64,000 bases of DNA from Paragordius varius (lineage: Eukaryota > Animalia > Nematomorpha). How positions within the stretch are numbered: the first letter of the stretch is position 1; every line of letters starts with the position of its first letter. Below the pieces are notes generated by a model that had not been told where the DNA came from, did no database searches, and saw only the letters and a program-made list of their open reading frames with translations. The translations under genes were made by a program, and so were the position numbers. The stretch covers positions 12,400,001 to 12,464,000 of the forward strand of contig OZ176050.1 in assembly GCA_964247055.1 (NCBI GenBank). Reading direction: 5' to 3'. Of the stretch, positions 16,901 through 64,000 are shown piece after piece.

Positions 16901-18137
16901 TAGAATACCACATTGTGAATGCAGAGATGGTTGTTTTGAGATGTATAATAAGTGCAGCAAAAGTGTTGCAAATGAAAACAGTAAAAGTGCAAGCCCGACA
17001 ACTAATTTAGAGCATTTGACTAAGTCCACAACTAAATACCAATCAAAATACAAAACCAAAAATTTTGGTATCATGGGAGGAAGCAAAAAAATTAAGAAAT
17101 TTGGCAAATTTCGTTACAATAATCATGAGATTTCCAAATCCTTTATTGGCCATAACTTTAACAATGTTGGGAATGAGAATATTGATCGACCATTTAATAA
17201 ACAGGATGAAATTTCTGCAACTGATTTTATTTTTGATAATCAATGTTCTCAAACCGATGGTTCGATTAAGGATAAGGCTACTTATACCTCTACTATAAAT
17301 CCAATTAATGCCAATATTGTAGATTACTCTTCTTCACAAAATTACGGTTATATCTATGGGACAAAATATGAACATATAAATAATCCTTTACAAGCATCAT
17401 CTATAGGTAAAAATAATCCTGCATATTTTATGGAGCAAGATCAATTGAATAATGGTTTTGAGAATAGAAATAATGGTAAAAATGATGTCAATTATACATG
17501 TGTTAACAAAACTGGGATTCAGATTTCAAGTACCGCCGCATCAAATATTGATCAGAGTTATCAAATAAGATACAATGTTTGGGAAAGGAAAGATGAACCA
17601 TGTGTGACAAATTGCAATGATCTAACCCCATATTTACCTAGCAAAAGCTATTTCGGAAATAATCGAACTGGTAGTTTACGGAAGCCTACAACTCTAAATT
17701 TAAATACGAATAAAAATATCTCTGCACCATTAAATTTTTCATTAGAAAACAATAAAAAAGTTTCTCCCATTTTACTTTCGAGTGGTCTCCAAAAAATTAA
17801 CGGTCCATCCCCCGGACAATTATCAACTACTGATGAATTAAACAGCATTCCAGATCACCTGATTCCACCACCTCCACCTTTGCACACCTTGTCAAACTTT
17901 CCCAACAACCCTAATAATTTGATTTTAAAAACACCGAGTATCGAAAAAAGTTTAGATATCCCCTTGCAAAACCATACAAATTATAATATTCAACATAACA
18001 TGACTCCTAATTCGTTTTTAAATACCAATCATGAACGACGCAAAAGGCTATACCGATCTGAGGAAATTGAAGGTAACTTAACTATTGCTGAGTTTATTAG
18101 AGTAAAATATAGCATAATTATTTTTAGTCTCTTTTAG
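4680..18137 (+). CDS. nlg: Neuroligin-like cell-adhesion protein (non-catalytic carboxylesterase/cholinesterase fold, TM, long tail). Coding exons 4680-5526, 11640-11774, 12592-12777, 13361-14246, 15573-15628, 15835-18137; about 1470 aa
   Basis: All junctions are GT-AG and phase-compatible. Motifs occur in the expected order: YLGIKFA..RRFMPP..WKG..NAT..GPICPQ, NEDCLNLNLYIP | KPVVLML..AIIITFNIRLGIFG | FF..[33 protein letters not shown] | DKFNNLILIGS..QCLKK..WKPYLD | YDANKRYYTELG | HDRMTFWNILVPIL, then TM ALTIALLLGTLLLLFNLFILLAIY-RQRRK. The start codon and extreme C-terminus are less certain. Confidence 0.9.
6537..6794. mobile_element. MITE family A copy
   Basis: Same TIR motifs (AAATTATACGGCAAAACG ... 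TTTTGTCCGTATAAAG..TTTTACTGTA). Confidence 0.8.
7268..7487. mobile_element. hAT (Charlie-like) MITE
   Basis: TIRs CAGGTATGTCCAAC / GTTGGACATCCCTG; 8-bp TSD TTTTAGAT / TTTTAGTT. Confidence 0.8.
7864..7896. repeat. (TA)n microsatellite
   Basis: Direct reading. Confidence 0.9.
10020..11177 (-). mobile_element. Decayed near-full-length mariner transposon in neuroligin intron 1
   Basis: Minus-strand remnants: MSNFVPSEK (ATG 11021), EKW, STTKPNRLSKKTMLCVWLDQ, ILLHDNAL..TLQSLQWE..SPDL, AGGQYFE*. The right end TACACCTGG|TA matches the 93-854 copy; the left boundary is approximate. Confidence 0.85.
12783..13312. mobile_element. Two tandem MITE family A copies (12783-13038 and about 13045-13312) filling neuroligin intron 3
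   Basis: Each copy has AAGACAAATATTT..AACAACCATATTTTT and inverted AAATATTTGTC..TTTTACT ends. Confidence 0.75.
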
Positions 18138-18339
18138 GTGATAGAATTATAATAAATTTTGTAATTGATCTTATTTAAAAATAATAGGAAGGTTAATTGG
18201 TACAGTAGATTCCAGCGTTTTTTTAAATTTTATGAACGCCATCTTACCTTTGGCTCTTTGAGTGTTGATGCGAAGTTTATTCATCCATTTTAGTAGTACA
18301 AAAGAAGAATCATTATACGGCTATAAGGAATGAGATAGA

Positions 18340-19044
18340 CCTCGATTTACTCGGTAAATGGGTCGCACACAATTTGATTGAGTTTTATGTCAAATCGCAA
18401 AGTGATATGTGGAATTGAGTTTAAACCTCATGAAAGACAATCTTTTTTGACACCCACTTGTAACGTGTAATGAGTGGCATCATTTTGTAAATCCAAAGCG
18501 GAAAAATGATGGATTTTATCCTGCTAGGAACACCAAAGCCAAATAGCATAGGCAGGTAGACCATGCTCGGTGCAAAGTAGCACCCATTCAATATATGTAT
18601 TTATAGACTTTTGAAGCCTTATTAAACTGTTAATAGACAATGCTATCGTTAAAAAAAAGATTTAATTGAAAAGCGACCGGAATGGGCCCAGACGGTATGG
18701 CAAAGTACTTTGGCCACATGACAATACACCGTCTCATACAGCAAAATTATTGAAACCTTGAAGTCGTTTGGATGGAAATATTTTTTCGCCTCCGTTAAAT
18801 TATCCAGACCTAGCGCAATAGACTTATACATCTCTACTTCAATATGGCACACCCTTTAAGAGCAGCGCTTAGACGCTAGGAAATGACTTAAGAATGGTTT
18901 CAAAGACAATCAGTTTTTCTGGCATAGCATTCATATATTGCCTGAGAGATAGGTGAAATATGTAGAAGCCGGTGGACAATAAATAAATGATTTTTTTTAA
19001 TATTAATTTTTTTACAACCGATAAAAACTTATAACCAGACCTAA
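18340..19044 (+). mobile_element. Decayed 5'-truncated mariner transposon
   Basis: Plus-strand remnants LGKWVAHNL, NPKRK, LIEKRPEWARRYGKVLWPHDNTPSHTAK, TLKSFGW..PDLA, FWHSIHILPER, VEAGGQ. The 3' end AAAAACTTATAACCAGACCTAA is mariner-TIR-like; the 5' boundary is approximate. Confidence 0.8.
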
Positions 19045-20472
19045 AAAATATACATTATGCATAAACTAAGGTGTTGTCAGCTTTGCTGAAATTTGGCCAT
19101 ATTCATCTTCTTAATTTTATCCTGGTGTTATTCGATGCGTTATAGGCGGCAAAAAGTTTGCGATACAATATATTTTAATTATTTTGCATGATCTTTTTGA
19201 AATAGCTTATTGGCAACAAACTAACACAAAAGCATATTCAAATAAAACAACTATATATACAATTTTTATCATCTTTAGACGACTCGAATTCTCCAAAATG
19301 TTTCGCGGGAACTGGCATTCAAGAGGTGCAAGTGTAAAATATATCGAAATCAATGTATGTTAGCAAATTATCTCTCTTTTTATGTAATATTACCCAATGT
19401 TTGTGCATTTACCTTATAATTATTTTACATAAAAAGTATAATACTTATGTAATAAATATCTTAAATGTGATAGGTTATCGAATAGTTTACCCTGACTCAT
19501 AAATTATTAAAAATTATCAAGTAATTTCACAGGTATGGAAATCTGCATATTTTATCAAGCGTGTAGTTTAGTTTCTCAAAGTAATAACAAGTGGCATATA
19601 TTCTTCATAATATTTTGTCATTTTTAATTTGTGTGAAAAATATGGGCTTTGAACCACCACCATAATTCACCCCTGGCTTAAGGGATTAAAGCAAAACTGA
19701 TTCCGATGAATCAGAAAATTATTTACTAATTTTTTAAGATACTTATTTGACTATGTATATTTGCAAATGTGTCAAACAGGCTATAAAATTTTACCGGTAT
19801 TATGGCTCTTGAGAAAAGAAAAATATTATTTTTTGACCCGTTAAAATTTTTTGGTTGGTAGCAATGGTTTAAATACAAATAGTTTTTTGAGAACTATGGT
19901 CGGGCTTTAATGTTTTTAACAACTTCAGTTAGAGCTTTAAAATCACATGGGCGGTTTCTTACACAAGATAGGTGTTATGTATGATAGTTTTCTCCAACAG
20001 CGATGAATGCCAAACTACAATAATTTTATAAATATACATTAATAGCAAAAACTATTCGGCACCTTAATTTATAATCCTAAAAATATATTTCATAAAATTA
20101 TAACGATCTAAATAAGCGAATATGGAAAAGGAAGTTTTGAAATATAAAATTACTATGAGGAGCAAAAAGCCGATGTACATTGAGCGCCAAAATCAAATTA
20201 TAAGCAGTATTGCTTTAATTGATTCAGTGTTATTAAATTTAAGTGGGATTCCAAAAAATTTCCCAGTTTCTCTTCTATTAACGATTGTTAAAAAATCGCC
20301 CTTTTTTAATATTGATTCGATGGAAAATCTGCACAAACGCGTAAAGCCCATTTTAAATGGCAATTATGTTTCATGGGATTAAAATTAAAATATTTGCTTT
20401 TAGTGAAATGATTAAAGGAGAGTAAATCTTAAAAACAATATTTTTATTATAATTTATGTGTATAATTTGATA

Positions 20473-20938
20473 TATACCGTTTGCACTTCAAGAGTGTCCT
20501 TGAACATTTAAAGTTAGTTCTTAAAATTTTTAAGTTTGGATTTAACCATAAATTTGGCATGTATTTATTTGTTTTATTAATGTCTGCCCTAATTTTCTTG
20601 ATTTATTGAATATTTATTTATTTAAAATTAATATTTTTTATTTAAAAACTAATTTTAGTTTTGAACTTTTTACTAATTCCACAACATGATTAGATAAATG
20701 TTTTCAACGATTAATTGTAATAAATAACCCAAAAACTGATATTTTTTCAATTAAATGTTAAAATATTAAAATTAATATATTTTTTAAAATAATCGGATTT
20801 TGATTTAAAAGTTGGGTTGAATCAAGAGAATTTAAAAATAATAAAATTATGATATACGGTTTTGATAAAATCAAAAGCAACTTGAAATTTAAGGACTAAC
20901 TTGAAGTGTTTAAGGACACTCGTAAGTGCAAATGTATA
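20473..20938. mobile_element. MITE with ~45-bp TIRs (TA-flanked)
   Basis: TTTGCACTTCAAGAGTGTCCTTGAACATTTAAAGTTAG is inverted to CTAACTTGAAGTGTTTAAGGACACTCGTAAGTGCAAA. Confidence 0.7.
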
Positions 20939-20979
20939 CAATGAATCAGCATTAGAAACGAAAGTTTTTCCGACCTCAA

Positions 20980-22076
20980 ATCTATATATTTATAAAAATG
21001 GAAAGTGGTGGCTTTGTGATCTGTTTCCGGAAAACCGGTAGACCCATTCAAATCCAAATGTCGAAAAAATATAATCATTAATGAATGCTCCGACAATAGC
21101 TTCGCCCTTTTCACCCCGTGTAAAAAACGGGTTACACATGTCCACAAAAATCATGTCTTTGAGGCAATTTTCCGGAAAACGTGTTGGACCATTTGATTTC
21201 AAATATGATATTTATTTGCTTTTTATCAATCGCGCCGAACATAGTCGGCTCGCTTTTTTAGTTTAGGCTCTCTTTTTACCCACTCCCCCCGTAAAATGCC
21301 ACTTTTTTTAAAAAAAATAAGTCCACAAAAATAATTTTTTAAATCTATCTTTCGCTCAAAGTATACCGTAAAAATTTAATAAGGATTCCAGTTCCCTGTT
21401 AAAAGGCAAAAATTTTAGTCATGCGTTTCTTTAATGATAGCTGATGGGTAAGGAGATACCCGCTAAAAACTGACCCGCCATATCGAAATGGCGAGCGCTG
21501 AATTTCAGAAAACCTATCAGGCCATACAATATCTGCTTAAAGTATTACCCGTAACAAGGCAAAAATCTAGGTCTTGTGTTTTAAAATTAGCCGTTAATTA
21601 AGCCCTTCACGCCCTGAAAAATGCGCCACCATAGAATGATTTTTTAATTTTGAGGAAATTTTTCCTAAAACTAATGAGAGCATATGGAATCAATTATGAT
21701 TCCAGGTATTTTCCGTAAAAAGGCAAAAATTTTAAACAAACGCTTTTTTTGTATCAGCTTCTGGGTAGGGAGCTACCCGTATAAAGCTGCGCCACTTTAT
21801 AGGAATTACGTTGTTTTGGAACTAATTTAAAGAAAACCTATCAGGCCATATGAGTTCAATAGGTGCTCGTAACAAGGCAAAAATTTAGGTCGTGCGGTTT
21901 TTTAAAATTGCCTTTTATTATGTATGCTATTTGGAAATAATTAATGACTTTCTAGCAATGTATATATTCATCTATATATTTATAAAAATGGAAAGTGGTG
22001 GCTTTGTGATGTGTTTCTGGAAAACCGGTAGACCCATTCAAATCCAAATGTCGAAAAATATAATCATTAATGAATG
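20980..22076. repeat. Near-identical ~108-bp direct repeats (20980-21087, 21970-22076) flanking diverged internal ~190-bp repeats
   Basis: ATCTATATATTTATAAAAATGGAAAGTGGTGGCTTTGTGAT...AATCATTAATGAATG occurs twice. The internal units AAGGCAAAAATTT..GAAAACCTATCAGGCCATA..CGTAACAAGGCAAAAAT lie at about 21400-21592 and 21718-21912. Confidence 0.85.
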
Positions 22077-25830: not shown

Positions 25831-26951
25831 GATAATCAGTAGTAGTAGAAAGGAAGTGTATAATCATATGATATAAATTCGGGAAAAATAAATAATTTAA
25901 ATTTAAAAATAAAAAATTTTAATTTAAAATTTAGATTTTAAAGATACTTAATGATAAAAAATTTAAACGGATAAAAAAAATTTATTTATATTAAAAAAAA
26001 TTTTTTTTATATAATCGTGAAAAAGCGGGACATTTTAAAAAGTAGCGGGACGCGGGACAAAGTGTGAAAAAGCGGGAATGTCCCGCCAAAAGCGGGACGT
26101 CTGGTCACCTTAATTATTACTTTAACCCAGTGGTACTCACCAAACAAGGGCCATATTACCGATATAATTGTAATACTGTTTGACAATTTTGAGATATTTA
26201 TACTCAAATAAGCAGTTCAGGGCCATAAAAAGTTTATAATGTTTTTTTATATTTTAGGGGAAATATCCGACTTCTAAAAGTATATATAAAACCGAGAAAA
26301 AAGCAAATTCGATAACTATGTTGATACTGAAAGAGCGATGTCGTCATAAAATCATTTGTCGTCCAATTTTTTGTTTTTATGCTTAGTATTCCCGTTTATA
26401 AAAAGCTAAAACTGTACCTCTTTTGTATTGTAATTATACTACAGAGTTTTTTTACGCTCCATCAACTGATATATGTTTTGTGACAAATTATTATATTTAG
26501 TTTAGTTATTATAATGTACAAATTAGACCTAAATGAATATTATTTTTAAAAAGAAAATCATTTTTTTATATAACCTAGTTGGAAACTTATTTTTTTTGTT
26601 TTTCACCCTACTACAGCACAATTTAGCAGAAAACGCAAAAAATATAACCTTGCTGTCTAGTGTATTTATTAAATATATAATTATTAGGACAGTGAAATAG
26701 ATTAATTGATGATATAGTAAAGTAATGCATGTTTAATTACATAATAAAAATATTACAATGTTTCCACACGTATGACTGTAGTGGATATATAAAAACATTC
26801 AATATAAGGTAAAAAAACTCTAATCAATATACAAATTAAGAATTAAATTTGGATTGCAGCAAGGCACGCATTCCTTCAGCTAGTAAATATTAGGATCAGC
26901 CCGAATTATTTTATAAATAAATATTCTCTAAAATTATTTCTTAGTGTTATC

Positions 26952-29900
26952 TTAAACTATAGTAGTTTTGTCAGGAAGTAAAACGTTGGGGAGTGCAAAC
27001 GGCTGTTTAAAATGAATCATTTGGGCATTATTTTCCTTATCGAACATAATGAGTGGTGTTACTTTAATAATTTCTTGCGCCGTGATATTTTCTAAGGCTC
27101 CATCAGTAGATAATTTAATGTTTGGTTCAATCTGGCCCATATTATATTGAGCCGAATAATATGAATATATAGGATAGTAGGATATTTCTTCCTGAATACT
27201 ATTAGGTTCAACACAGTTATTACTCATGCTAACAACAAGATTCTCATCATCTCGGTTCTTTATGTAACGAGTTGTTATATAATTATTTGACTTATTACAG
27301 TTTTTTTGGTTTCTAAGACGGTCATGCAGATGTGTTGTTGGAGAAATATTACTAAATCTGATAGCTTGTTGAGTCGTCTTATTTTCAACAATGTTCTCAT
27401 TTGGTGACCAAAATACATTATCTTCATCACATTCTTGTAGGGCGGCTGGTGCATTACATAAGTATTTATCATTATTATCAAGGCCGCTTAATTGATAGCT
27501 GCTACCACCTTTTATCATTGCGGTATTTGGGGCGTTGAAATGCTCAAGTTCATTAATACAGATTGGGTGGTGATGATTCAATTTTTCCTGATAATTTTGA
27601 TAACTATGATCAAAATCATTAAAATTGACATTATTATTATTATTTTCATGATTATAAAATAGCTCGACAGTTGTCGCATTACTCAAATTGAAAGAGGACG
27701 AAGATTGGGGCCAACCTGTTCTTACGCCATTTTCAAAATTATTTTCTTGTTGCTGTAAAAAATAATGGTGTTGATGTTTGGGTGTTCCACTTTCTCTACC
27801 AGCATTTAAAAGAGCATATTTATTGGTTGCAATAGTGGCATCAATCGTAGCCGTTATTTGATTTCCATTTTCTAATATATCATCGTTATTATTATTGAAA
27901 TCACGTAGAGTTTGATTTAAACTACCTTCGTGGTGGTTATTATGATTAATATAATTTAAATTATTGTAATAATCGATGTAGGATGCGATCGGACTCCTTA
28001 TGCCATTATCTATATTCAAAGAAAAAATGATATTGCTTAAAAACTGATTGTGATAATCTTTAGAAATATAAATATCCTACATTCATCTTTTAAAAAGATA
28101 TAATTTAGAGGAAATATTATGTAATTAATTTGGCTATTTATAAAAAATGAACATTATAAAAATAGCTAAACTCACCGTTGATTTTTGTTAAATGATGCGA
28201 TTTAGACATAGCCATAGGACTTTTATTCGTATTCTTTCCACAATTCGGTATAGTATCGTTTGGTGGCAAATGCATTGTATTATTATTATTATTATTATCT
28301 AAAACTTGGGTTTGCGTGGTTGATTTCCCAATAATTTTTACATTACCATATATTCCATTCATTGATTTAGATTTATGCTTGTTGTTGCTACCGCCTCTTT
28401 GATGTCCTGGTTTAGGCTGAAAAAAAGATTTTAACGTCCCGCTGAAACCGGATTTGGGTACAAACGGATTTTGTATGACAAAATTCTTTTTGGAGGGCGT
28501 TGATGATACATCTTTGTCATTGTAACAATTATAGGGGTAATTGTAACACGTAATATTTTTGGGCGGCGTCACTTGAACATTAGGGGAGACATTTTCATCT
28601 TTTACTTTAGTCTGTTTATCAACAAGTGTAAGATTACCGTTCTCATAACAGGAATAACCTTGATTAGCGCTCCCGTTTAAACTGGATTTCTTACCATTCA
28701 TCATATGTCCTCCATTCGCTAACTTCTTTGACGACGCAGTATAATTTTTCTCTTTTTTGTCGCCATTTTTATTACCGTTAACTCGTTGTGAGATTCGTCT
28801 GCGCCAAAACATACAAAAACCACTTACGACTGCGATAAAGAGAAAACCCATGCCTACAATCAATAGGATAGCGTAGAGAGTAGATATGGGACCCACAGAT
28901 GTGGTCAGTTTAGGGTCAAAATCATTATTATTATTAGCATTATCCGAATTTCTAAGATAATTATTTTTAGGGCCATCAATAGAATTTATTTGTTTCTGAT
29001 ACTCGGTATTTTTGTCTAATAAGTAATGGTAATTGCCACGAAAATTTGGAATATCCTTATTGTCAAAAATATTGCTGATATCGCTAGCAAAATCAGAATT
29101 TTGTCGTTTCAACTCTTTTCCTGCCATAGGATATGCCGGTTTCGATTCATAAGGCGAAAAATTATTGAGAGCTTTAGGCATGGGCGATTGTTTAATGTAA
29201 AATGCCTTACGTGCACGGAAATCAAATCTTTCACGATATTCATATTTGGGTATCACCTCTATTTTTTCACCCTTCCCTACGCTAACATTTTCATATTTTC
29301 TATCCCTAGAATCGTTTATGATGTTATTAACAGCTTCTGTGTTATCGGATTTAACAATTGGAATAGTTTGTAAAGGAACACAAGAATATACACCTGGTTT
29401 AGGGCAACGCATAACCAAACGAGTATTTAGGGCAAAGAGTGGTGAGACACTATCATTTTTTGACATAACATTCCACCAAAATTTATGATTGCTGCTTGGC
29501 GGCATAAACGGTAACGAATCCAATGATCGATTATAATCAGAGGCTAACAAATATAACTGATCATTAGGTTTAATAAGATGATTATATAATCCATTATTGT
29601 CGAGGGAAGTAACTTCCTCATAGGTGGATATAGGCGTCGTTTGTGTCGTTGTTGTCAAGTGTACATTCATTCTGCGTGATCGCTTTTTAAACGCCACCTC
29701 GTCGGTTGAATCCTTTAGCGTTACCAGAGAATTGGAAACGTAATGGTGTAATGATTGTTCAGATATTACGCTGTATTGGGGATTGTATTCGGAACTCTCT
29801 TGAAAAATCCACACTACCCGTGGTAAAGGATCTCCCAAGAAATAGCATTCAATATCGAGAGTCGAGATGGGCGTGTTTCCATCACGTAAACAAAAATCTT

Positions 29901-50800: not shown

Positions 50801-51356
50801 AAATGCCTACACATGAGGGCCCAGTTCCTTAACTTCGTGAGATACAATGCTGTCAAAATTTGTTTTAGCACCAATCTCATTGGGTGTGCTAGAATTATTT
50901 TCGGTGGCAAAAATGCATAGTTTTTGAGTTGTGGTTTGGACATATATCTGTTGTAAAACAATTATGAAGTCAAGTAATTATTTTATAATATTTTTAAAAA
51001 TTACCATTAATGATACATTGTAAACACTTTGATCGGACATGGGATTGTGTATAGTGACGTAAGCTTTGAATGTTTCGCCTAAATAAATGGTCCTATTATA
51101 TTTAGACATAAAAATACCCAAATGTTTGAGGCAATTTCATACGTAAACCAAGTGATGAGGGATATTCCAAGTCAGAATTCGTATTACAATTGGCTTCTAA
51201 ATCGTATTTCATTTGATCGTAACAATAATCTTGCTGCTCCCCGATGGCATAAAGATTTGAATTAAAATGTGGAACTGATAATCTCATAACTACATAATTA
51301 AAGTAATATATAACACCTTTTAATTCTATGTACTGTTTATCGGCTATTATACTCAT
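46558..51356 (-). CDS. TRAPPC13: Trafficking protein particle complex subunit 13. Exons 51356-51317, 51289-51118, 51092-51005, 50947-50811, 50725-50575, 50077-49944, 49871-49765, 48689-48604, 48086-47986, 47081-46922, 46650-46558; 422 aa
   Basis: The spliced translation follows TRAPPC13 collinearly: LKVMRL..P, LPQTFG-TIYLGETF, HEVKELGPHVLIC, KKFFKFQVNKPLDVKTKFYN, VYLETQVQNLTSNPM, LMPNDVRQYLF, VGKLQIGWRGPYGEKGALQTSPLHR, IPDQAGVEETF, ERSMDL, SISGIRLIDTFLNRTYDYDNIGQVYV*. All 10 introns are GT-AG and exon lengths sum to 1269 nt (423 codons). Confidence 0.93.
47840..47874. repeat. (TA)n microsatellite in a TRAPPC13 intron
   Basis: Direct reading. Confidence 0.9.
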
Positions 51357-51453: not shown

Positions 51454-52784
51454 ATGGAGCGGTTGAGGCGTAGCTTTAGAGACAGTTTTCGAAAACACAA
51501 GAAAAATACTCATAAAAATAATACACTTGAAATCTCAAAGCCTATTGAATGGCAAGCGGATGAAATAGCTGTAAAATCTGGATCCTGCAACTTCCAAGTC
51601 AAGGTAAAAATATTTTTTATAATGTGTTTGAGTTTTTTATTCAATTTTTTTATCAAAATTAATTTAATTATTCTTTTTTAAACAGTATTTAGGATGTACC
51701 GAAGTTTTTGAATCAAGGGGCATGCAAGTTTGTGAGGAAGCTTTTAAAGTTTTAAAAGTAACTTTCAATTTTGTAGCAACCTTAATTGCTTTAACTGTTT
51801 CATACTAAATTATTACCTTATTTTTTAATTTTTTAGCGTGGAACTAAAAAACCTATACGATCAGTCTTGCATGTCAGTGGTGAAGCCCTTAGAGTTGTTG
51901 ATAAAGACTCAAAGGTTAGCTCTTAGATAAGATTTACCAATTTGATAATCATAATTTTCTCTGCTTTTTTATTTTTTCGTTAGATTTTAAAATTCGGTTG
52001 TAAATATGGTTTGCTGAAAATTTCGGCTTTTCACCTTCAAATCATTGATTTGGACACGAATGTAAGTAGTTTATTTGTGTCCATCCGTTCTCTTGTCCCT
52101 ATTTATTTTCATATTTGTCCCATCACTGTAGTTTTATATTTTTTGTCGCAAACTATTTAAATTTTATTTTTTTATAGCTCAATTTTAAAATAAAACGTGT
52201 TTTTTGAAAATATTCACTGTGTTTATAAATATGAAATCTACAGAAAGTACGAAATTTTATGTGACAAATAAAACTTTATTCCGCATAGAATTTCATTTAC
52301 TAACATTTTGTGGTGATTTAAAAATGAAAACTTGTAACAAGAAATTTAATTTTTTGGTTTTATGGTTATTAATTTTTATTTATTTTTTATTAAATTATAA
52401 TAATTGTCTAGGTCTTTTGAGAATTTTTGAATATCTTCAGACTAAATTTTCCCAAATTATTTTAGAACTTTTCATTATTTTAATAAAATGGTCGGATAAT
52501 TAATATTTTGATTTTACCTAATTTCATAATATAAATTTTTATTTACGTAATATATCATAAATTTGCTCAACGCATTTACGAAGGTTAATTTGTTTTATAA
52601 AATTAGAGTTAGATTTTATAGATAAATTGGGAATATCATATATAAATATTATACATTGTTTATATTTTTTATGTGGTGTAACAGTCAATCTGATTTGCGT
52701 TGTGATTTTATTACATTCTATCAATATTTTAGCTATTATCTTTATATATAAATATAAAATATCTTTTGGCAATTTGGGAAGACA

Positions 52785-52824
<40 letters not shown>

Positions 52825-55339
52825 TTTTATGTCTGATTTTGTTCATATTTTTAATTATTTAAATTACAACTAATTTAAATATTTTAGTCATGGTTCATAG
52901 ATGGTCTGTTCTCTGCTTTAAAATTGACTAAAAATATATTTAACGTCAAGGTATAAGGAAAAACAAGGGCGATATTTGTAATCATTTTTAAGGGCTGAAT
53001 AATGTTGAATTTCATCAGATATTATCGAATTCAATGGTTAATTAAAATTTTGATATAAATTAGGGTAGCTTAATTTAGACCAGGCTAAATCATAAAATAG
53101 AAAAAAATCTAAGTATTTAAGGGCATTCAGTGGTGTTCATATTTTTAAATTAATTGAAGGCATTCCATATTTTTGTAATTATTTGATTTCGGGGTATTTA
53201 TCTACCTCAATTCGTATCGAAGGGCATCCATATTTTTTCTTGACTATTTAGTTTTGTTGTCGGTAAAATTAATTTGGATCTTGACAAAAAATTTAAATTT
53301 TTAAACTGGATTTGCTTTCTTATGATATTTTATTTTTGTTTTTCTTTTCACACATAAAATTGTCGTAATGTGTCATTGTCACACACACCACGCGTTAAAA
53401 ATCCTTTTTTACTTTAATTATATATTATTTTTTATTTTTCATTTTAAATTAGATTATGTACATAATAACTATCTATGTATTGTAGCCTGAGGGATTTTTT
53501 GCAAAATGAAATGTATTTAGTTACTTATCCATATTAATTTTTCATGCGTGTTAATAAACTTTTTCTTTTTGTTTTTAAACGGGAAAATGTGATCAATAAT
53601 ATTATGATTTCAAGAGTCCTTATATAAAAGTATTGATTCTATCATCATTAATATTATGTGACTTGTCTTTTCTATTATTCTTCTTAATTTTTCTCGTAGA
53701 ATATATTATAAGTAAACTGTAACTTTATAAGTATCCTGACTTGTTACAAATGTATACAGTAGTATTAAAAAAATGTTGCTTTTTACAAAAATAATTGGGC
53801 GATCCTGTTTTAAATTTGAGTTTTAAATGATCAGTTAAAGTGTTGAGTATTTTTAAAATTGACATTTTTAAAGTTGAAATAAACATTATTCGTTAATATA
53901 TGTATATATGAGTATTTAGATGGCCTTATTTTTTAACCTTAAACATGCATGATATTGTGATGAGTTTGATTTATATTTTGACTTGGAATTTGGACTTTTG
54001 TTAATCTCAACGAAATTCCCTAATAATAAGTACAGAAATACGGACAAAGCGTAAAAATATAAAGACAGATATTTTTTTAGAGATACCCATACTTTTTAAT
54101 CTTAATTTTTATAAATTATATCTGATTGTTTTAAACTTCAAAGTATAAATTAGAAATGTATAATTGGTAACACATTCAATTTTATAATTTACAGTGTTAA
54201 TTAAATATTTTATATAAGAAAAGTTATAAGATTTAAAAAAGTATGGTTGATTGTCTCATGAAAAAAAAAAATTTTATTATTACGTTATGTCCTAATTTCA
54301 ATTTTTACTGTGAGTTTTTAAAAGTTATTATATAAAGCAGTTAGTTTTTGAATTTATTAAAAAAAAACCGTGTTTTTAAGTAATATTAACTTAAATTAGT
54401 GCTCTTTATTTCTTAATAATATGAAATAACTTTAATATTAAAGCGTCTGTAATACAATATATATGAAAAATTTGTAGGGACTAATTGTCGATCAAACGAT
54501 AGAAAAAGTTAGTTTTTGCGCACCTGATCGGAATTACGATCGTGGATTTTCTTACATTTGCCGGGATGGAGCTACGCGACGATGGCTATGTCATGGCTTT
54601 ATGGCTTACAAATATTCGGTAACATAACTTAATTTTTCTTAATTAATTGCTTTTTTGAAATTTAAAACTGTATATTTTTTGCTGCATAAAAAACTATAAA
54701 GATTAATTAATTACTTTAGTGCATAACATTGGTATTAGGAATGGTTTATTATTATTATAATTAAGAAATAGATTGAGGATAGGGTAGTTATATTGGTAAA
54801 GAATTGTCTGGAAACAATATATATATTAATTTAAAACCTATAAAGGTATAAATACTGTACATTGTAAAATTTCGATAACTCTGAATATTCAATAATATTT
54901 TTAAAAAGGGACATGATTCATTCAAAATGATATAAGAAAAAATTGCATCTGATTATGTAATAATAAATCTTTGCCCTTTTAATTATAATTAAATTAGTTT
55001 TTGCACTTTTTAATTATCCTGTACTTGTTACAAATAGAAACAAGGTCCTATCGCCATGTTCAATCGAGGTGCACGAGTTAAGGTAAGTAAGATTATTATT
55101 TCTTCGTTATCTTTCCAATAACTTTGATTGTGTTTCTACTCTGCCTGTTTTTCTTGGGAATTTTATTGCACATTTGATTATTACACTGTTTTCTGCACAT
55201 TATTACTTTCTCAGTTTATGATCACTTCCTAAACTCTATCATTTGCCTTATTTTCCTCCTAAAGCTTTTCTTTCTTTACTAATATGAATTAATCTTAAAT
55301 AATCTCCTAGATTTGGGTTTTTACCATGCTTTATTAAGC

Positions 55340-55374
<35 letters not shown>

Positions 55375-58300
55375 CTCACCCACTAAATAATTTATGGATA
55401 ATGGTAAAACAATGATGGAAACGTTAGAAATAATGGGAAATTAAAGCGTAATGCACCAATATCTAATTTTACTTATGTATCTACCTCAATCATTCCTGAT
55501 CCTACATTATATATTAGTCTGGTGTTTAAAATGTATTACTATGAAAAAAAAATCAAAAAGCATTAACTCCAGTTTTCATATATCGGCGAATTTTATAATC
55601 CTTCTGTTAAATCAAAAGATAATTTGATTAATTTAAAGCCTTTTTGGCGTTAGATTCTTATTGCATTATCCCATTTCTGCCAAAACAAAAAAGATGGACA
55701 AAATATTTTTATTACAATGCTTTGTTTCTTAGAATGGATTTTGCTATAAATTGTCCCTAATATGATGGCTTTAATATTTGCTAATGCTTCAAGAGACTCT
55801 ATTGATTTTTTACCTGTATAGTGTTTCTTTAGCTTTCATATTTACCATACAATCTAGAATTTAAGGTACATGCATTTGTTTTTTTTAAACAAAAATATTA
55901 ATTTACATAAAACGTCGTTGGTGTCACATAATATCTCTTAATCTGATTGCATAAGTCATGCCATGTACGTACTTTTGCATACTTTTATTTTTAATTTTCC
56001 ATATTTCTCTCTTTTCTTGCAATGGAAAAAGTAAATGTTGGAAAAGTTTTGAGAGTTCTTAAACTGAATAGGGAGTTTGATTTTTTTGCTATTGTAAAAT
56101 GGTAAATTACAGAAGTATTTTTCTATGAACAATTGTTAGAGTCCAAGAATCCTCTAAGTCGCTTTACAAATAATCTCAGGCTAAAACTCAGTTTTATGTT
56201 CAATCTTTCAGTTTAATTTCCTGAAATTTTAATGATTTATATTACTGCATTGTTACGAAATTGCAAAATTGGATATAAAAACCCCAAGTGTCAGATAGTT
56301 GGTCGCACTGATGGATGCTAACAAGCCAAAATTAGTCTGCGATTACTATTGACAAATGATTTTACTTCTTTTTTTTTCTTCGAAACTTTAATTTTCAGTT
56401 AAAACATAGTTGAATTTTTGTTGCTAACCTTATTTCATGGATTTTAAAATTTTCTGCCTTTCTTAATTTGATAGAGATGAGATAGGTTTTAAATATTTTA
56501 ACCATATATAAAATAATTTGAATATAACCATATCTCACATTGTTTTTGCATATATTATTCATATGATGCAAATCGTATTATAATAAACAGAGACTGTTTT
56601 TACTCAACATTTTATTATGTGACAGTTTCATACTTTTTTTATCTGTTATTAAACGAAAACCACCATATAAGTTATAAAAAAAGAGTAACGGATAACCTTG
56701 AAGTTATTTAATATTATCAAACAACCAACTAACTATTGATAATTGAATAAATTTATGATTAATCAATATTTATAATTATATAATAATCAAAACAACCATG
56801 GCAACAGGTCTTCTTTGATCAAAACGTTTTGATAATACAGAATAAGGGAAATAATTTTGGTTATAAGGTCCTTTAAATAGATAATTTAAAGCAAATATTT
56901 TTTTCTAAATTGTCCAATATATATATATTATGCTCGAAAATATAAAACCTAGTTTAGATACCTTATCTTTATTTACCGATTAAAAACACTTTCTAGCTCA
57001 TAAAAATACGCCTGTTTACTGTATTTATTTGGATGTCACAGTTTTTTGCTCTAACTAAGTTTAAACTGCCTAACTACCATTTTTGTATTACATTGTTATT
57101 TAAATTTTGGAAGTGGAATATATATATATTTTTATTAAATAAAATTCAACCATTTTCCAACTTCTATTCTATCATTGTTTCTGGTTTTCCTAAAGTGACA
57201 AATGTCCATTATTTTTTATCGATATTATTCGTTTAACCGGTTTAGAGTTTTAATATCAACCAAGCTAAATTCATATTATAGCATGTATAAAAAGAATGAA
57301 AATACATAACTTTCATCTTTTTATGTGCTTTGCTTTGTTTTTAATATACCTTTTCAAATTCTATTGCCTTTGCACACATAACATCAATGGTTAAATTACT
57401 AACCAAATTAAGCAAGAAAAAACAAAAAAGTCCATGCTAACACTTTAAACATAATTTTTTTATCTATTATGCCCCGATTAGTATGAGTAAAAATACATTT
57501 CTAGTTTTTCATTATATATGTTGTCAGATAGCTTTTTCAATAAAGAACAGTATTATTGGATAAAAGCGGCAAGAGAAAGCGAAGAATTGCCATTATATTT
57601 ATATTCAGTACAATCATACTTCTCTATTATATATGCTCTCTGGCAATATTTAGTGAAAACCCAGCAATGTATTGTTATTCATACATACGGTAACAGAGTA
57701 TATTCACATTATTGTTGGCCAATTGTTAATAAACATAAGCGTGTGTTATAAAAAAAATTTTGTCCATAATTAAACAATTTTTTCCTATCCATCTTTCATT
57801 ACTTAGTTTATTTAATTATGGACAAAATCTGTTTTATAACGCACGTTATTGTATCCAAATCCACTAACACCAATATATTAGCACTCATATTGTCTAATTA
57901 CCAATTATTATATACTCTTTACTATATGTATATATTCAATTTAGGGTGAGCGTCTAAGTCATGCCGTAGGTTGTGCTTTCGCCGCGTGTTTGGAACGGAA
58001 ACAGGCACGTGATCGGGCATGTGCCGTCGCTGCAAAGTATGAGGGTGGCCTCAACAAAACCACATTCACACGGTATGGTTCATTTATGAGCAATTCATCA
58101 TCTCCACAACAGCTGACAGCTGTAAAACAGCAGAATATGACGCATTCATCTAATCATCAGCTGCTGCTTGATACCGCTGCCAATCAAAATGCGCACACGA
58201 CAACAAACGGTCACATGACCTCAACCACCACTGCCAAAATCAATGAGCGATGGGCAAACGAAAAGAAGGCAGACGATATTATAGCTCAACAACAACAACA

Positions 58301-60025
58301 GAAGCAGCCATTCTTCTCTTTACTCAAGAATAAACGCCATCTTTTTGGACGAGGTTTCTTCATTATTAAGATTTAAAATGATTAATTTAATGTATAGTAC
58401 GGTTTATATAAACCTTATAGAATTTTTTAAATTGTGTTACTCTTAGATTAAAATTCCACATTTACATATCATATATAATGCGTTTTTCTTTTATTCATAC
58501 CTTATACCATTGACATCAGACTTTATTAATTTTTCGTTTTTAAATTGTGTATACAGAATTAAGCTTGCCAAACGGTGTTCTCATAAATTCACCCCTTCGA
58601 CCTCAGTCTCACAATGAACCTTACAGTAAAAGTTTTGACAAAGCATCCAACACAGCCATTTCTAGCCAAACTAATGCCATGAATGGAAGCGTTGTTGGTG
58701 CCCGACAAAGACCACCCATCAAAATGGATTTACTACGCCAAGCGTCATTCAGGTGCCCACATTTATCCTCAAAAAAAGATTTTTCTCCCTTTAAAAAGCA
58801 ACTTTCACTGCGATTAACTGAATTACCTTCTACGTTAGAGCGCATAGCTTCTTCAAATGAAGGATCTTTGACTAAGACATCACCTCAAAATGTCAACTAT
58901 AATACTCGGAATAATAATGCTAATCATAATAATACTTCATTACTCTTTGAATCTGATTTGGATGAAAACGCCGATACTTTGAGTAATGGCACAAGTTGCC
59001 GAAAAGAATTAGATTTTACAGAAAATGGCCCCCATGCCTTAGGCCGAGATATAAATGAATTATGTAAACAAATTTCGAGCAATTTTCCAATATCTCCGAC
59101 GACCACTAACGTATCACAAACAACGGAACATTCACCTTTGGACCCTTCTCCCCTAGCTTATAATGCAAAAGAACAATATACAACTGAGACGGAATTCCTA
59201 AAAAATCAAAATTTTAATTCATCGAAACCTATTCCTCCAATCATTAATGGTAATAATACCAATTCTCAGCTTTATACAAAGTATGATTCGCCATCTCCCA
59301 CCTTTCAAACTACACATTTACCCAAAAGGAATAAACAACCTCATGCTAATCATCAGTCAAATTCAGCGGTCTATTCTTTGGATTCTATTGATGGAACCCG
59401 TAAATTTGCGCTAGAAAAGCATTCTAATCAAAACATGGGCGAAAAGGGCCACGTCGCCACTCATTATTATAATACTGATAATACTAAGCATAATAATTTT
59501 AATGGAAATGATGCGAATCATGAATCCAAACAACATAATTTTATCATAAACATTCAAAATAATTTATATCATAATAGCAGCAGTGAAAATCATAGTACCA
59601 GCTATAATCACAACCATCAAGGTCATACAAATGGGTCTTCTGGTACATCCGGGCAAATGAATCAGCCATATCATTTCAACAAAACAAATCCCTTTCTCCT
59701 TTCACATCAATACATTGTTCCATCATATAATCATCAACATAGGAATGAGGGGGAGCCGTATGACATGAAACCCAAAAATTTACATTCACACAATATTGGT
59801 GTCATTCGAAAAGAATATTATCATGCTCAAAATAATGGCGGTGACTATAACATTAATAATAATAAAAGATCAACAGCTGATTTTGTACCCTTGAAACGAG
59901 CAGACGATGAACAAATGATTGGTGCATCAGTACCTTTGAATGGGTTTTATGTCACGAGACCTTTTTCACGTGCTACAACTAATCCATTTCTCATTCCCGT
60001 AACTAATATAGGCTCACCCTCATAA
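51454..60025 (+). CDS. numb: Numb endocytic adaptor (PTB domain, NUMB domain, NPF motifs). Main exons 51454-51603, 51686-51757, 51837-51914, 54478-54618, 57945-58353, 58557-60025; about 772 aa
   Basis: [33 protein letters not shown]|[24 protein letters not shown]|[26 protein letters not shown]|[41 protein letters not shown]..|[24 protein letters not shown]-domain motif [28 protein letters not shown] and two NPF motifs. The 58354 donor (gtttct) is weak but phase-compatible. Confidence 0.95.
51984..52061 (+). CDS. numb: Putative alternative (mutually exclusive-type) numb exon 3b, 78 nt, [26 protein letters not shown]
   Basis: Long pyrimidine tract plus ttag acceptor and perfect gtaagt donor; phase 0/0; same length as exon 3 (51837-51914). 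Residue pattern [16 protein letters not shown] aligns without gaps to [16 protein letters not shown]. Confidence 0.75.
52787..52820. repeat. (TA)n microsatellite in numb intron 3
   Basis: Direct reading. Confidence 0.9.
54031..54312. mobile_element. MITE family A copy in numb intron 3
   Basis: TACAGAAATACGGACAAAGCG..AAGACAGATATTT ... AAGTATGGTTG..TTTTTACTGT. Confidence 0.75.
55038..55082 (+). CDS. numb: Putative 45-nt numb cassette exon, [15 protein letters not shown]
   Basis: aaatag acceptor after a T-rich tract and AAG|gtaagt donor; phase 0/0, stop-free, and GC-richer than the surrounding intron. Confidence 0.5.
55342..55372. repeat. (TA)n microsatellite in numb intron 4
   Basis: Direct reading. 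Confidence 0.9.
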
Positions 60026-62078: not shown

Positions 62079-64000
62079 TGTTACGTTAAAAATATATATT
62101 ACCTTGGTTGTGAATGCAAATTATTTTATTTATACTTATTATCTTTAACAACGTTTAAACCACACAACTATCCTTGTGAATGCAATAACCAAATTTCCTA
62201 ATGTATATAAGGAATCATTGTAACACACAGAACACATTATATTATATTATTCGATTTTGATGTTATACTAAATAAATAAATATATCCTTTATAATTTATA
62301 TTAACTATTTGTCAACTGGCGCGGCTATTCGAGGCTATGGAAAAAATTAATTTATCATGTTTTAATCCAAATGTTGAGTTTACAAATTATATTACATATA
62401 TTAAACGCAATTTGGAGGTCAAGAATGTCGCAGCCACCGATGAAAATATGAAAGCATGTTTGTTGGCTTTCGGAGGAATCGAAAATATTAATAAAATTGA
62501 AAATTATTTCTATCCACAAGCAATAGACGACATACCATTCCCAGATCTATTAAACGCCGGTATAAAAATCTTCTCCCCCTCAAGGAATATTTTTTCGTCG
62601 CGTTTTGATTTAATTAAAATGAAGAGGGGGAGAATGGAAACGTTCACAGAATTCCTGTTAAGAGTTAAACAAATGGCCATCCACTGCCGGTTCTCGTCAA
62701 ACATTGACGAGCACATCAGAGATGTATTCATCGCCGGGTTAGACGAGCAAGCCGTGGAAATGGAACTATTCACACGGTTCCCAGAAGCTTTAGAAAACGG
62801 GGCTCCCGTTTCTCTAAATACGGTGGTAAATATTGCCTTATCACATGAAAAGGCACGAGATGGACTAACGAATACAGAAGTGCTGTCCATCAATATTGAT
62901 AATGATAATAAAAGTAACAATAATAAGAACCACAGTAGTAATGGTGAAATAAACGAAATAGCCACACTTCACCAATCAAAGAGCAGCCATAGTAATAATA
63001 ACCGACGAACCTGCACAAAATGTGGGACGACTCATACGTTGGGACATTGCCCTGCCTATGGGAAAGAATGTTATAGATGCCATCGTTCAAACCACTTTGC
63101 TCGATGTTGTAAGGTAGTGTTTAAAGCATATTCCCTTTTTAATAAGACAAAAAAACCCCAAATTGTTCCTAAAATAAATAATATTCCTATTGAAATGATT
63201 TTTGATACGGGTGCCGATATTTCAATTATAAATTATAAAAACTGGTGCCGTCTCGGCAAGCCAGCACTAGATTTTGATAACAATAATATTTTCATACATG
63301 CATACAATAATAATCGTATAAAAACATTAGGTAAATGCAAATTACAAATTGAATTAGATAAAAGAACGCACATTCTAGAGTGCTTTATTATAAACAACAA
63401 CTTACCATCAATATTTGGAATAGACTGGATAAAACAATTTAATTTAAAATTACCCAATCATGTAATAATAAATAACTTATCTTCATATGATATATATAAC
63501 AAATTTAGCAAGTTATTTTCTGAGGGCCTTGGTTGCTGGAAGGGCGACCCGATTAAAGTATTTTTAAGTAATAATAATTGTGGTAGAATTTTTCCAAGTA
63601 GAAGGGTGCCACTATCATTACAAAGCAAAGTGGAGGATGAGCTAAATAGATTGGTAAAACTGGATATAATTGAACCTGTTGATCCAAAAAAGACTAGAAT
63701 CGTTTGGTCCAGCCCTACTGTAAATATTATAAAACCTAATAAAGAGCTTAGAATATGCGCGGATTTTAAAATAAGTATAAATCCACACATAAAACCGCCG
63801 CAATACATAATCCCAACCTTTGACGACCTCATCTCAAAAATTTCCTTCGGCAAATCTTTCTCGACACTAGATTTGAAAGACGCCTATTTTCAAATTCCAG
63901 TAGACCCAGATAGTCAGCACTTACTAACAATTTCGACACATAAGGGGTTTTATAAGTATAAACGATTGCCTTTCGGGTTGAATTGCGCCCCAAGTTTCTT
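62079..64000 (+). mobile_element. Ty3/gypsy (Mag/K02A2.6-like) LTR retrotransposon, 5' part
   Basis: Putative 5' LTR TGTTACG...TTTGTCA (62079-62314; start inferred) containing AATAAA, followed by PBS TGGCGCGGCT at 62317 and then the gag-pol ORF. Confidence 0.88.
62337..64000 (+). CDS. Gag-Pol polyprotein (gag, zinc knuckles, aspartic protease, start of RT); open through the window end
   Basis: 554 uninterrupted codons from ATG 62337: CTKCGTTH..GHCPAYGKECYRCHRSNHFARCC, protease IFDTGADISII, RT WSSPTV..KPNKELRICADFK, LDLKDAYFQI..HKGFYKYKRLPFGL. It is absent from the ORF track because there is no stop in the window. Confidence 0.93.
   Translation, partial: MEKINLSCFNPNVEFTNYITYIKRNLEVKNVAATDENMKACLLAFGGIENINKIENYFYPQAIDDIPFPDLLNAGIKIFSPSRNIFSSRFDLIKMKRGRMETFTEFLLRVKQMAIHCRFSSNIDEHIRDVFIAGLDEQAVEMELFTRFPEALENGAPVSLNTVVNIALSHEKARDGLTNTEVLSINIDNDNKSNNNKNHSSNGEINEIATLHQSKSSHSNNNRRTCTKCGTTHTLGHCPAYGKECYRCHRSNHFARCCKVVFKAYSLFNKTKKPQIVPKINNIPIEMIFDTGADISIINYKNWCRLGKPALDFDNNNIFIHAYNNNRIKTLGKCKLQIELDKRTHILECFIINNNLPSIFGIDWIKQFNLKLPNHVIINNLSSYDIYNKFSKLFSEGLGCWKGDPIKVFLSNNNCGRIFPSRRVPLSLQSKVEDELNRLVKLDIIEPVDPKKTRIVWSSPTVNIIKPNKELRICADFKISINPHIKPPQYIIPTFDDLISKISFGKSFSTLDLKDAYFQIPVDPDSQHLLTISTHKGFYKYKRLPFGLNCAPSF

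What the first reader, a model, noticed from the sequence alone, without database searches (positions are those of the whole stretch)
51837..52061. Tandem-duplicated, same-length PTB exon pair in numb: candidate mutually exclusive exons
Seen: exon 3a (51837-51914, [26 protein letters not shown]) is followed after a 69-nt intron by a second 78-nt, phase-0/0, stop-free segment (51984-52061, [26 protein letters not shown]). It has a strong pyrimidine tract and a perfect gtaagt donor. The two align without gaps and keep the beta-strand pattern (VLHVS/LLKIS; [16 protein letters not shown]), but the basic N-terminal patch is replaced. Established: this part of the PTB fold follows helix A, where the vertebrate Numb 11-aa PTB insert modulates membrane/phosphoinositide association. 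Inference: an old exon duplication lets the animal swap two PTB strands and change lipid or partner binding. I know of no mutually exclusive PTB exons described for Numb.
Basis: partly seen in the sequence, partly recalled or inferred. Interest (0 to 1): 0.82.

Follow-up and report, generated by a model that had tools for sequence, protein, structure and literature searches.

The report
Duplicated alternative PTB exon in hairworm numb
A horsehair-worm numb gene carries a second, diverged copy of the 78-base exon for two strands of its peptide-binding (PTB) domain. The copy is kept in another hairworm genus, where gene models already use it, but the two copies do not look strictly either/or, so this is a real but fairly ordinary alternative exon.

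Summary
Exon 3a (51837-51914) and a stop-free 78-nt segment, 3b (51984-52061), lie 69 nt apart, both in phase 0/0. Segment 3b has an AG acceptor behind a strong pyrimidine tract and a GTAAGT donor.

The 3a/3b similarity within the window is weak on its own (5/26 identical, BLOSUM62 score 7). About 0.3% of background windows score as well.

The decisive evidence is a relative. The numb-like gene of the horsehair worm Gordionus sp. m RMFG-2023 has an orthologous 78-nt exon at the same place. It is the reciprocal best hit of the window's 3b (score 36, next best 21-25). It is also clearly similar to 3a (score 34-36), so it links the two window copies.

RefSeq and submitter models in Gordionus use this exon in four ways: 3a only, 3b only, both, and neither. 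So 3b is a real, conserved, tandem-duplicated alternative exon, but strict mutual exclusivity is not supported.

AlphaFold models favour substitution. The 3b-only form gives a confident PTB fold, while in the 3a+3b form the 3b segment is low-confidence.

No RNA data covered the window species. No 3b-type sequence was found outside hairworms.

Earlier notes of this scan list similar duplicated exon pairs in other genes of this genome. This is a new member of a known kind, of modest interest.

The parts
51454..51603 (+). numb exon 1 (ATG to donor; GT at 51604)
   Evidence: ORF. It is 58% identical to the Gordionus numb-like N-terminus and collinear with it in tblastx.
51686..51757 (+). numb exon 2, 72 nt, phase 0/0: end of strand beta1 and helix alpha1 of the PTB domain ([24 protein letters not shown])
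   Evidence: Sequence. It is 96% identical to Gordionus. The helix assignment comes from the model.
51837..51914 (+). exon 3a, 78 nt, phase 0/0: alpha1-beta2 basic loop and the beta2-beta3 hairpin, canonical type
   Evidence: It is 77% identical to Gordionus 3a. The same 78-nt AG..GT exon is present in Nymphon and Ephemera.
51915..51983 (+). 69-nt GT-AG intron between 3a and 3b, with a strong pyrimidine tract before 3b
   Evidence: It shows no differences in the organism-B contig, while the deeper intron is 7-9% divergent.
51984..52061 (+). exon 3b, 78 nt, phase 0/0: diverged tandem duplicate of 3a and an alternative coding exon
   Evidence: It is the reciprocal best hit of Gordionus exon L001:26957-27034 (score 36, next best 21-25). 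That exon is used in RefSeq isoforms X1-X3 and X5. The organism-B contig carries a single synonymous change in it (52016 G>A).
52051..52083 (+). 12-bp hairpin enclosing the end of exon 3b and the G(+1) of its donor; possible damper of 3b donor use
   Evidence: -14.9 kcal/mol, z -3.5, matched by 1 of 200 shuffles. It is absent at the Gordionus 3b donor, so its role is speculative.
54478..54618 (+). exon 4, 141 nt, phase 0/0 ([47 protein letters not shown])
   Evidence: Pfam PID, E 1.2e-9. It is 91% identical to Gordionus.
57945..58085 (+). start of exon 5: C-terminal helix of the PTB domain ([20 protein letters not shown]...); the exon's 3' end was not determined
58700..58849 (+). conserved NumbF region inside the large 3' coding ORF 58547-60025, which also holds two NPF motifs
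   Evidence: Pfam NumbF, E 7e-12. tblastx gives 72% identity to Gordionus. ORF text.

Best explanation
The gene is the numb orthologue of a horsehair worm (Nematomorpha). Its 78-nt exon for the alpha1-beta2 loop and the beta2-beta3 hairpin of the PTB domain was duplicated in tandem before the window species and Gordionus diverged.

The downstream copy, 3b, has evolved about four times faster than 3a at the protein level. It still keeps its reading frame, length, phase, splice sites and the hydrophobic core pattern of the hairpin (L-K-I-S ... L-Q-[IV]-I-D-L-x-T).

3b is an alternative exon. Splicing exon 2 to 3b to exon 4 gives a Numb whose PTB domain has a substituted hairpin and a less basic, more hydrophobic alpha1-beta2 loop. 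I infer that this is the form selection acts on, and that it changes membrane-lipid or partner binding at the face where vertebrate Numb carries its 11-residue PTB insert.

The choice is not strictly either/or. All exons here are phase 0 and the 3a-3b intron can be spliced, so transcripts with 3a+3b and with neither exon also arise, as annotated in Gordionus.

Shown: the exon's existence, its conservation, its homology to 3a, its annotated use in a relative, and its compatibility with the PTB fold.
Inferred: its expression in the window species, which isoform is functional, and the biochemical effect.
For: - Identity of the gene: the window gene has Pfam PID and NumbF domains. Its only close relatives in the protein search are Gordionus numb-like proteins.
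- Orthologous exon: Gordionus has a 78-nt phase-0 exon (NFRKKIIMAILKISTTSLQVIDLSTQ) between 3a and exon 4, at L001 26957-27034.
- Reciprocal best hits: the window 3b against all 14253 stop-free 26-mers of L001 gives Gordionus 3b on top (36, next 21). Gordionus 3b against the 21339 window 26-mers gives window 3b and 3a on top (36 each, next 25).
- Homology to 3a: Gordionus 3b scores 34 against its own 3a, and 3b references score 42-45 against arthropod 3a exons.
- Core residues: Gordionus 3b keeps the columns L, L, V and T that are invariant in 46 other Numb sequences, nearly all arthropod.
- Divergence: synonymous sites are saturated even in the constitutive exons, and intron flanks are at random identity (0.35-0.375). 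An unselected ORF would not have survived.
- Annotated use: isoform X5 is 3b-only, X4 and X6 are 3a-only, X1-X3 have both, and X7 has neither. Both annotations were made with RNA-seq available (for the submitters' BRAKER run).
- Close relative: the organism-B DNA contig shows 1 change, synonymous, across 51712-52061. Three changes follow within 76 nt after the 3b donor, then indels, and the deeper intron is 7-9% divergent.
- Structure: the 3b-only PTB model has pLDDT 80.6, with 94-95 over the 3b strands. It superposes on Drosophila and human Numb PTB crystal structures (TM by target 0.86-0.96, rmsd 1.3-2.2 A). The 3a+3b model drops to 71.2, with the 3b segment below 50.
Against: - No RNA evidence exists for the window species. 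The three small putative RNA runs had no contig on any numb exon.
- Use of 3b in Gordionus is known only from automated gene models, not from reads that I inspected.
- The AlphaFold runs used an alignment of 3a-type sequences. That biases the 3b-only model toward the PTB fold and treats 3b as an insertion in the 3a+3b model.
- 3b is poorly conserved in its first nine residues, and overall only 38% identical between the two worms.
- The close-relative comparison has little power: there is only one substitution inside 3b, and the short introns beside it are equally conserved.
Confidence: 0.65

Rival explanations
1. Strict mutually exclusive splicing: every mature numb mRNA carries exactly one of 3a or 3b, and the 3a+3b and neither-exon models in Gordionus are annotation artefacts or splicing noise.
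For: The pair has the classic signature of mutually exclusive exons: adjacent, equal length, same phase, homologous. A 3b-only isoform is annotated. The 3b-only model folds confidently, while the co-inclusion model does not. The introns flanking 3a are unusually conserved in organism B, as seen around regulated exon clusters.
Against: Two independent annotation pipelines give 3a+3b models (XP_065316892-94 and CAK9297024). None of the enforcing mechanisms tested here is present. Both exons are 78 nt, so co-inclusion and double skipping stay in frame and escape nonsense-mediated decay. The 69-nt intron (787 nt in Gordionus) is well above the 25-nt intron that this genome splices. No docking/selector complementarity stands out above AT-rich background.
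Confidence: 0.15
2. 3b is mainly an in-frame insertion cassette. The functional alternative form contains 3a plus 3b, which places a 26-residue extra segment between beta3 and beta4 of the PTB domain.
For: Isoforms X1-X3 and one BRAKER model include both exons, and X1 is the longest model. The 69-nt intron has good splice signals. In the 3a+3b model the rest of the fold still forms.
Against: 3b conserves exactly the alternating hydrophobic pattern and the invariant core residues of the hairpin it duplicates. A surface loop would not need these. The 3b segment is below pLDDT 50 when co-included, and the confidence of neighbouring strands falls. A 3b-only isoform is also annotated.
Confidence: 0.15
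3. 3b is a chance intronic open frame, or a decaying pseudo-exon with no function, picked up by gene predictors because it is in frame and flanked by AG/GT.
For: Similarity inside the window is weak (score 7). About 15% of 78-nt frames in this intron are stop-free. No RNA data exist for the window species. 3b evolves fast (dN 0.72 against 0.19 for 3a).
Against: The same length, phase, position and splice sites are retained in a genus so distant that synonymous sites are saturated and intron flanks are at random identity. The two 3b exons are reciprocal best hits, far above all background frames. Invariant fold residues are retained.
Confidence: 0.05

Closest known systems
Vertebrate NUMB exon 3 (the 11-residue PTB insert, PTBi/PTBo isoforms)
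   Same: Both are alternative splicing events in the Numb PTB domain, at the junction right after helix alpha1. The hairworm exon 2/3 boundary is that site. From my own knowledge of the Numb literature, the vertebrate insert alters membrane association and partner binding. PDB 5NJJ/5NJK are the human isoform-1 PTB domain and are among the top structural matches. The start of 3b mixes basic with aromatic or aliphatic residues (ILKFGCKY in the window, NFRKKIIM in Gordionus); the vertebrate insert, as I recall it from memory, has that character too (not checked here).
   Different: The vertebrate event is a simple cassette that adds 11 residues. Here a whole 26-residue structural unit (loop plus two strands) exists in two homologous copies. 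The papers returned by the searches describe NUMB alternative splicing only as the exon 3 and exon 9 cassettes; none describes a duplicated PTB exon.
Tandem-duplicated, mutually exclusive exon pairs (for example those catalogued in Drosophila, C. elegans and human; reviews PMC9013439, PMC9741552, PMC5740500)
   Same: The exons are adjacent, of equal length and phase, and homologous in sequence. They encode a structurally equivalent module of a domain and have been conserved over a long time.
   Different: Exclusivity is not shown and is probably not strict. All four inclusion patterns are annotated in Gordionus, and no steric, frame-based or RNA-structure mechanism is evident.
Gordionus sp. 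m RMFG-2023 numb-like, RefSeq isoforms X1-X7 (XP_065316892 to XP_065316899)
   Same: It is the orthologous gene with the same exon order. It has the same 78-nt 3a and 3b exons, and its genome has the same 27% GC.
   Different: The intron between 3a and 3b is 787 nt rather than 69 nt. Its 3b keeps a basic FRKK start. It has an extra 12-residue alternative exon for which no counterpart was found in the window. It lacks the hairpin at the 3b donor.

Membership tests
Numb endocytic/cell-fate adaptor | N-terminal PTB/PID domain | tested here: met
   Pfam PF00640 matches window exon 4 alone at E 1.2e-9. Exons 2, 3a and 4 are 77-96% identical to Gordionus numb-like.
Numb endocytic/cell-fate adaptor | NumbF domain after the PTB domain, and C-terminal NPF motifs | tested here: met
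   Pfam PF06311 at E 7e-12 in ORF 58547-60025. Two NPF motifs are visible in that ORF.
Tandem exon duplication (homologous exon pair) | Adjacent exons of the same length and the same phase | tested here: met
   Both are 78 nt, phase 0/0 and 69 nt apart. The same holds in Gordionus, where they are 787 nt apart.
Tandem exon duplication (homologous exon pair) | Sequence similarity beyond chance between the two exons | tested here: met
   Within the window the similarity is weak (score 7, about 0.3% of background). Gordionus 3b scores 34-36 against both 3a exons, above every one of 14253-21339 background frames. 3b references score 42-45 against arthropod 3a exons.
Mutually exclusive exons | One and only one of the pair is present in each mature mRNA | tested here: inconclusive
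   No RNA reads cover the window species. In Gordionus, gene models show 3a-only, 3b-only, both and neither. This argues against strict exclusivity, but it rests on models, not on read counts.
Mutually exclusive exons | A mechanism that enforces exclusivity: an intron too short to splice, a frame shift leading to nonsense-mediated decay on co-inclusion, or competing RNA structures. Incompatible U2/U12 splice sites were not examined. | tested here: not met
   The 69-nt intron compares with a 25-nt intron that must be spliced in the neighbouring TRAPPC13 gene. Both exons are multiples of 3. Inverted-repeat and folding scans show only AT-rich background.

The most novel reading that the evidence does not exclude
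Horsehair worms evolved a regulated swap of the Numb PTB beta2-beta3 hairpin and the adjoining alpha1-beta2 loop. This would be functionally convergent with the vertebrate exon-3 PTB insert, toggling membrane or partner binding of Numb between life stages (parasitic juvenile versus free-living adult). 3b-only would be the dominant alternative form, and the donor hairpin in the window species would act as a lineage-specific regulator.
Probability: 0.2. Interest if true: 0.5.

Novelty: new member of a known kind. Interest (0 to 1): 0.35.

Why it matters
If the 3b-only isoform is the working product, the same spot of the Numb PTB domain has been made splice-variable twice in animals, by different means: an 11-residue insert in vertebrates and a duplicated two-strand module in hairworms. 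That would point to this face of the domain as a general control point for Numb localisation or partner choice.

It also adds a clean, phylum-restricted example to the catalogue of tandem exon duplications. Earlier notes of this scan list similar pairs in other genes of the same genome (Piezo, a ZP-C protein, UBR).

The practical value is modest. Hairworms are not experimental models, and the isoforms are already present, undescribed, in RefSeq for Gordionus.

Tried and rejected
- RNA evidence. The single run search found no run on record as RNA that holds the stretch. The three small putative RNA runs of the same species (X4-X6) laid no contig on any numb exon.
- dN/dS between the window and Gordionus. 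Synonymous sites are saturated in every exon, including the constitutive ones (dS undefined), so no ratio can be given.
- 3b-type sequences outside hairworms:
  - A region-restricted search with the 3b-only isoform found only Gordionus above the common 3a-type level (230 bits against 168 or less).
  - An exhaustive HMMER search of 1.84 billion representatives with alpha1+3b+beta4 gave no hit better than 3a-type matches (63% or less). Its two 'two-stretch' hits were intron read-through models.
  - A short-fragment search, followed by a scan of all 331 fetched proteins, found no 3b-like core apart from the Gordionus isoforms that include 3b.
  - The introns after exon 3a in a sea spider and a mayfly hold no 3b-like frame (best score 10).
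  - Clustering hides isoforms and only two outgroup loci were read, so absence elsewhere is provisional.
- Docking/selector RNA structures. Inverted repeats around the cluster are AT-rich and unremarkable. The 383-nt region folds with z -1.45.
- A possible third copy in Gordionus (L001 30403-30456). It is bounded by stops and has no AG/GT, so it was rejected as an exon.
- A counterpart of the Gordionus 12-residue exon in the window. None was found.
- The look-up of encoding contigs failed for P0001 and P0002 and worked with the longest isoform, P0010.

Full report
**What is in the sequence**

The surrounding gene reads as follows on the + strand:
- exon 1, 51454-51603
- exon 2, 51686-51757 ([24 protein letters not shown])
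- exon 3a, 51837-51914
- the candidate 3b, 51984-52061
- exon 4, 54478-54618
- exon 5 from 57945
- a large 3' coding ORF, 58547-60025

Exons 2, 3a, 3b and 4 are all phase 0/0. Segment 3b has an AG acceptor behind a long pyrimidine tract, an in-frame TAG just upstream, and a GTAAGT donor. The open frame itself continues to 52157, so the matching 78-nt length depends on that donor.

Pfam finds PID in exon 4 and NumbF in the 3' ORF. The gene is numb.

**Is the 3a/3b resemblance more than chance?**

Not on its own. The ungapped BLOSUM62 score is 7, with 5/26 identities. In the window, 65 of 21339 stop-free 26-mers do as well against 3a. About 15% of 78-nt frames in this 27%-GC intron are stop-free. 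The window alone gives a suggestive coincidence, no more.

**Evidence from relatives**

A search with the poorly conserved C-terminal ORF found only two clusters, both numb-like proteins of the horsehair worm Gordionus sp. m RMFG-2023. The window species is therefore another hairworm.

One Gordionus protein reads ...[58 protein letters not shown].... In the Gordionus locus L001 the second segment is a separate 78-nt exon at 26957-27034. It lies 787 nt after 3a (26092-26169) and well before exon 4 (33624).

The two 3b exons are reciprocal best hits:
- The window 3b against all 14253 stop-free 26-mers of L001 gives Gordionus 3b on top (36, next 21).
- Gordionus 3b against the 21339 window 26-mers gives window 3b and 3a on top (36 each, next 25).

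Gordionus 3b also scores 34 against its own 3a, and 3b references score 42-45 against arthropod 3a exons. It thus bridges the weak 3a/3b similarity inside the window and establishes that 3b is a duplicate of 3a.

The shared 3b core is L-K-I-S-x3-L-Q-[IV]-I-D-L-x-T, with 10 of 16 residues identical. In an alignment with 46 other Numb PTB sequences, nearly all from arthropods, Gordionus 3b keeps the invariant L, L, V and T columns of the hairpin.

The two worms are distant. Synonymous sites are saturated even in constitutive exons, and the 40 nt on each side of 3b are at random identity. Survival of frame, length, phase and splice sites therefore implies selection. 3b does evolve faster than 3a (dN 0.72 against 0.19).

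A much closer relative, organism B (run X3), adds a little. One contig covers 51712-52137 with a single change up to the end of 3b (52016 G>A, CTG>CTA, synonymous). Three changes follow in the next 76 nt, then indels, while the deeper intron is 7-9% divergent. This is consistent with constraint on the whole exon 2-3b block, including its short introns, but the power is low.

**How the exon is used**

No RNA data could be brought to bear on the window species.

In Gordionus the cluster of numb-like proteins holds seven RefSeq isoforms and two of the three submitter models; the third submitter model forms its own cluster. Aligned over the PTB region, they fall into four groups:
- 3a+3b: X1-X3 and CAK9297024
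- 3a only: X4, X6, CAK9297023 and CAK9297025
- 3b only: X5
- neither: X7

The submitters' annotation used RNA-seq with BRAKER. So 3b is used by two independent pipelines, and a substitution isoform exists, but the pair is not treated as exclusive.

Nothing in the sequence would enforce exclusivity:
- Both exons are multiples of three.
- The 69-nt intron is far longer than the 25-nt intron that the neighbouring TRAPPC13 gene must splice to read ...LPQTFG|TIYLGETF.
- Scans for competing RNA pairings gave only AT-rich background.

**Structure**

The 3b-only PTB (Gordionus X5, residues 20-200) was modelled with an alignment of 46 other Numb sequences.
- It reaches pLDDT 80.6.
- The 3b-encoded residues form two strands at pLDDT 94-95, directly after helix alpha1.
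- The model superposes on the top-ranked Drosophila and human Numb and Numb-like PTB crystal structures at 1.3-2.2 A.

The 3a+3b form (X3, residues 20-215) falls to pLDDT 71.2.
- The 3b segment is below 50.
- Neighbouring strands lose confidence.

The alignment biases both results. Still, together with the retention of hairpin core residues, they favour 3b acting as a substitute for 3a rather than as a loop insert.

The start of 3b is less basic and more hydrophobic than that of 3a in both worms (ILKFGCKYG and NFRKKIIMA, against RGTKKPIRS and RGKKKSLRA). This is the loop where vertebrate Numb carries its alternative 11-residue insert. A change in lipid or partner binding is a reasonable inference, but it is untested.

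**Distribution and novelty**

No 3b-type sequence was found outside hairworms:
- not among the top numb hits
- not in an exhaustive search of 1.84 billion representatives
- not among short fragments
- not in the post-3a introns of a sea spider and a mayfly, both of which share the same 78-nt exon 3a

The papers found by the literature searches describe NUMB alternative splicing only as the vertebrate exon 3 and exon 9 cassettes. The event is thus undescribed, but it is already present in automated annotation and belongs to a well-known class.

**Verdict**

This is a new member of a known kind, with interest about 0.35.

Noticed in passing
window 52051-52083: A 12-bp hairpin pairs the last 11 nt of exon 3b and the G(+1) of its donor with 52072-52083, leaving donor positions +2 to +10 in the loop (-14.9 kcal/mol, z -3.5). 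It is not present in Gordionus. The two nearby organism-B changes (52068, 52085) spare the stem. It could damp 3b donor use in this species.
   Followed up: partly
window 51093-51117 (minus strand): The neighbouring TRAPPC13 gene needs a 25-nt GT-AG intron to keep the frame (...LPQTFG|TIYLGETF). I checked this directly from the sequence. It shows that this spliceosome handles very short introns.
   Followed up: yes
L001 35035-35070: Gordionus numb has a further 12-residue alternative exon (KNGIFRKRTHVK) just before the C-terminal PTB helix. It is disordered in the model. No counterpart was found in window 54619-57944.
   Followed up: partly
L001 30403-30456: In the Gordionus intron after 3b, a frame reading AWHLKNVDLDT resembles window 3b ([11 protein letters not shown]). 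It is bounded by stops and lacks AG/GT. It is either chance or a decayed third copy.
   Followed up: partly
window about 53950-54290: A high-copy repeat lies inside the large intron. Contig depth in run X3 rises to several thousand here, with many partial contigs and internal joints.
   Followed up: no
window 63675-63995 (minus strand): tblastx against the Gordionus locus shows a reverse-transcriptase-like match (…LLTISTHKGFYKYKRLPFGL…). It is probably a retroelement fragment at the window's end.
   Followed up: no
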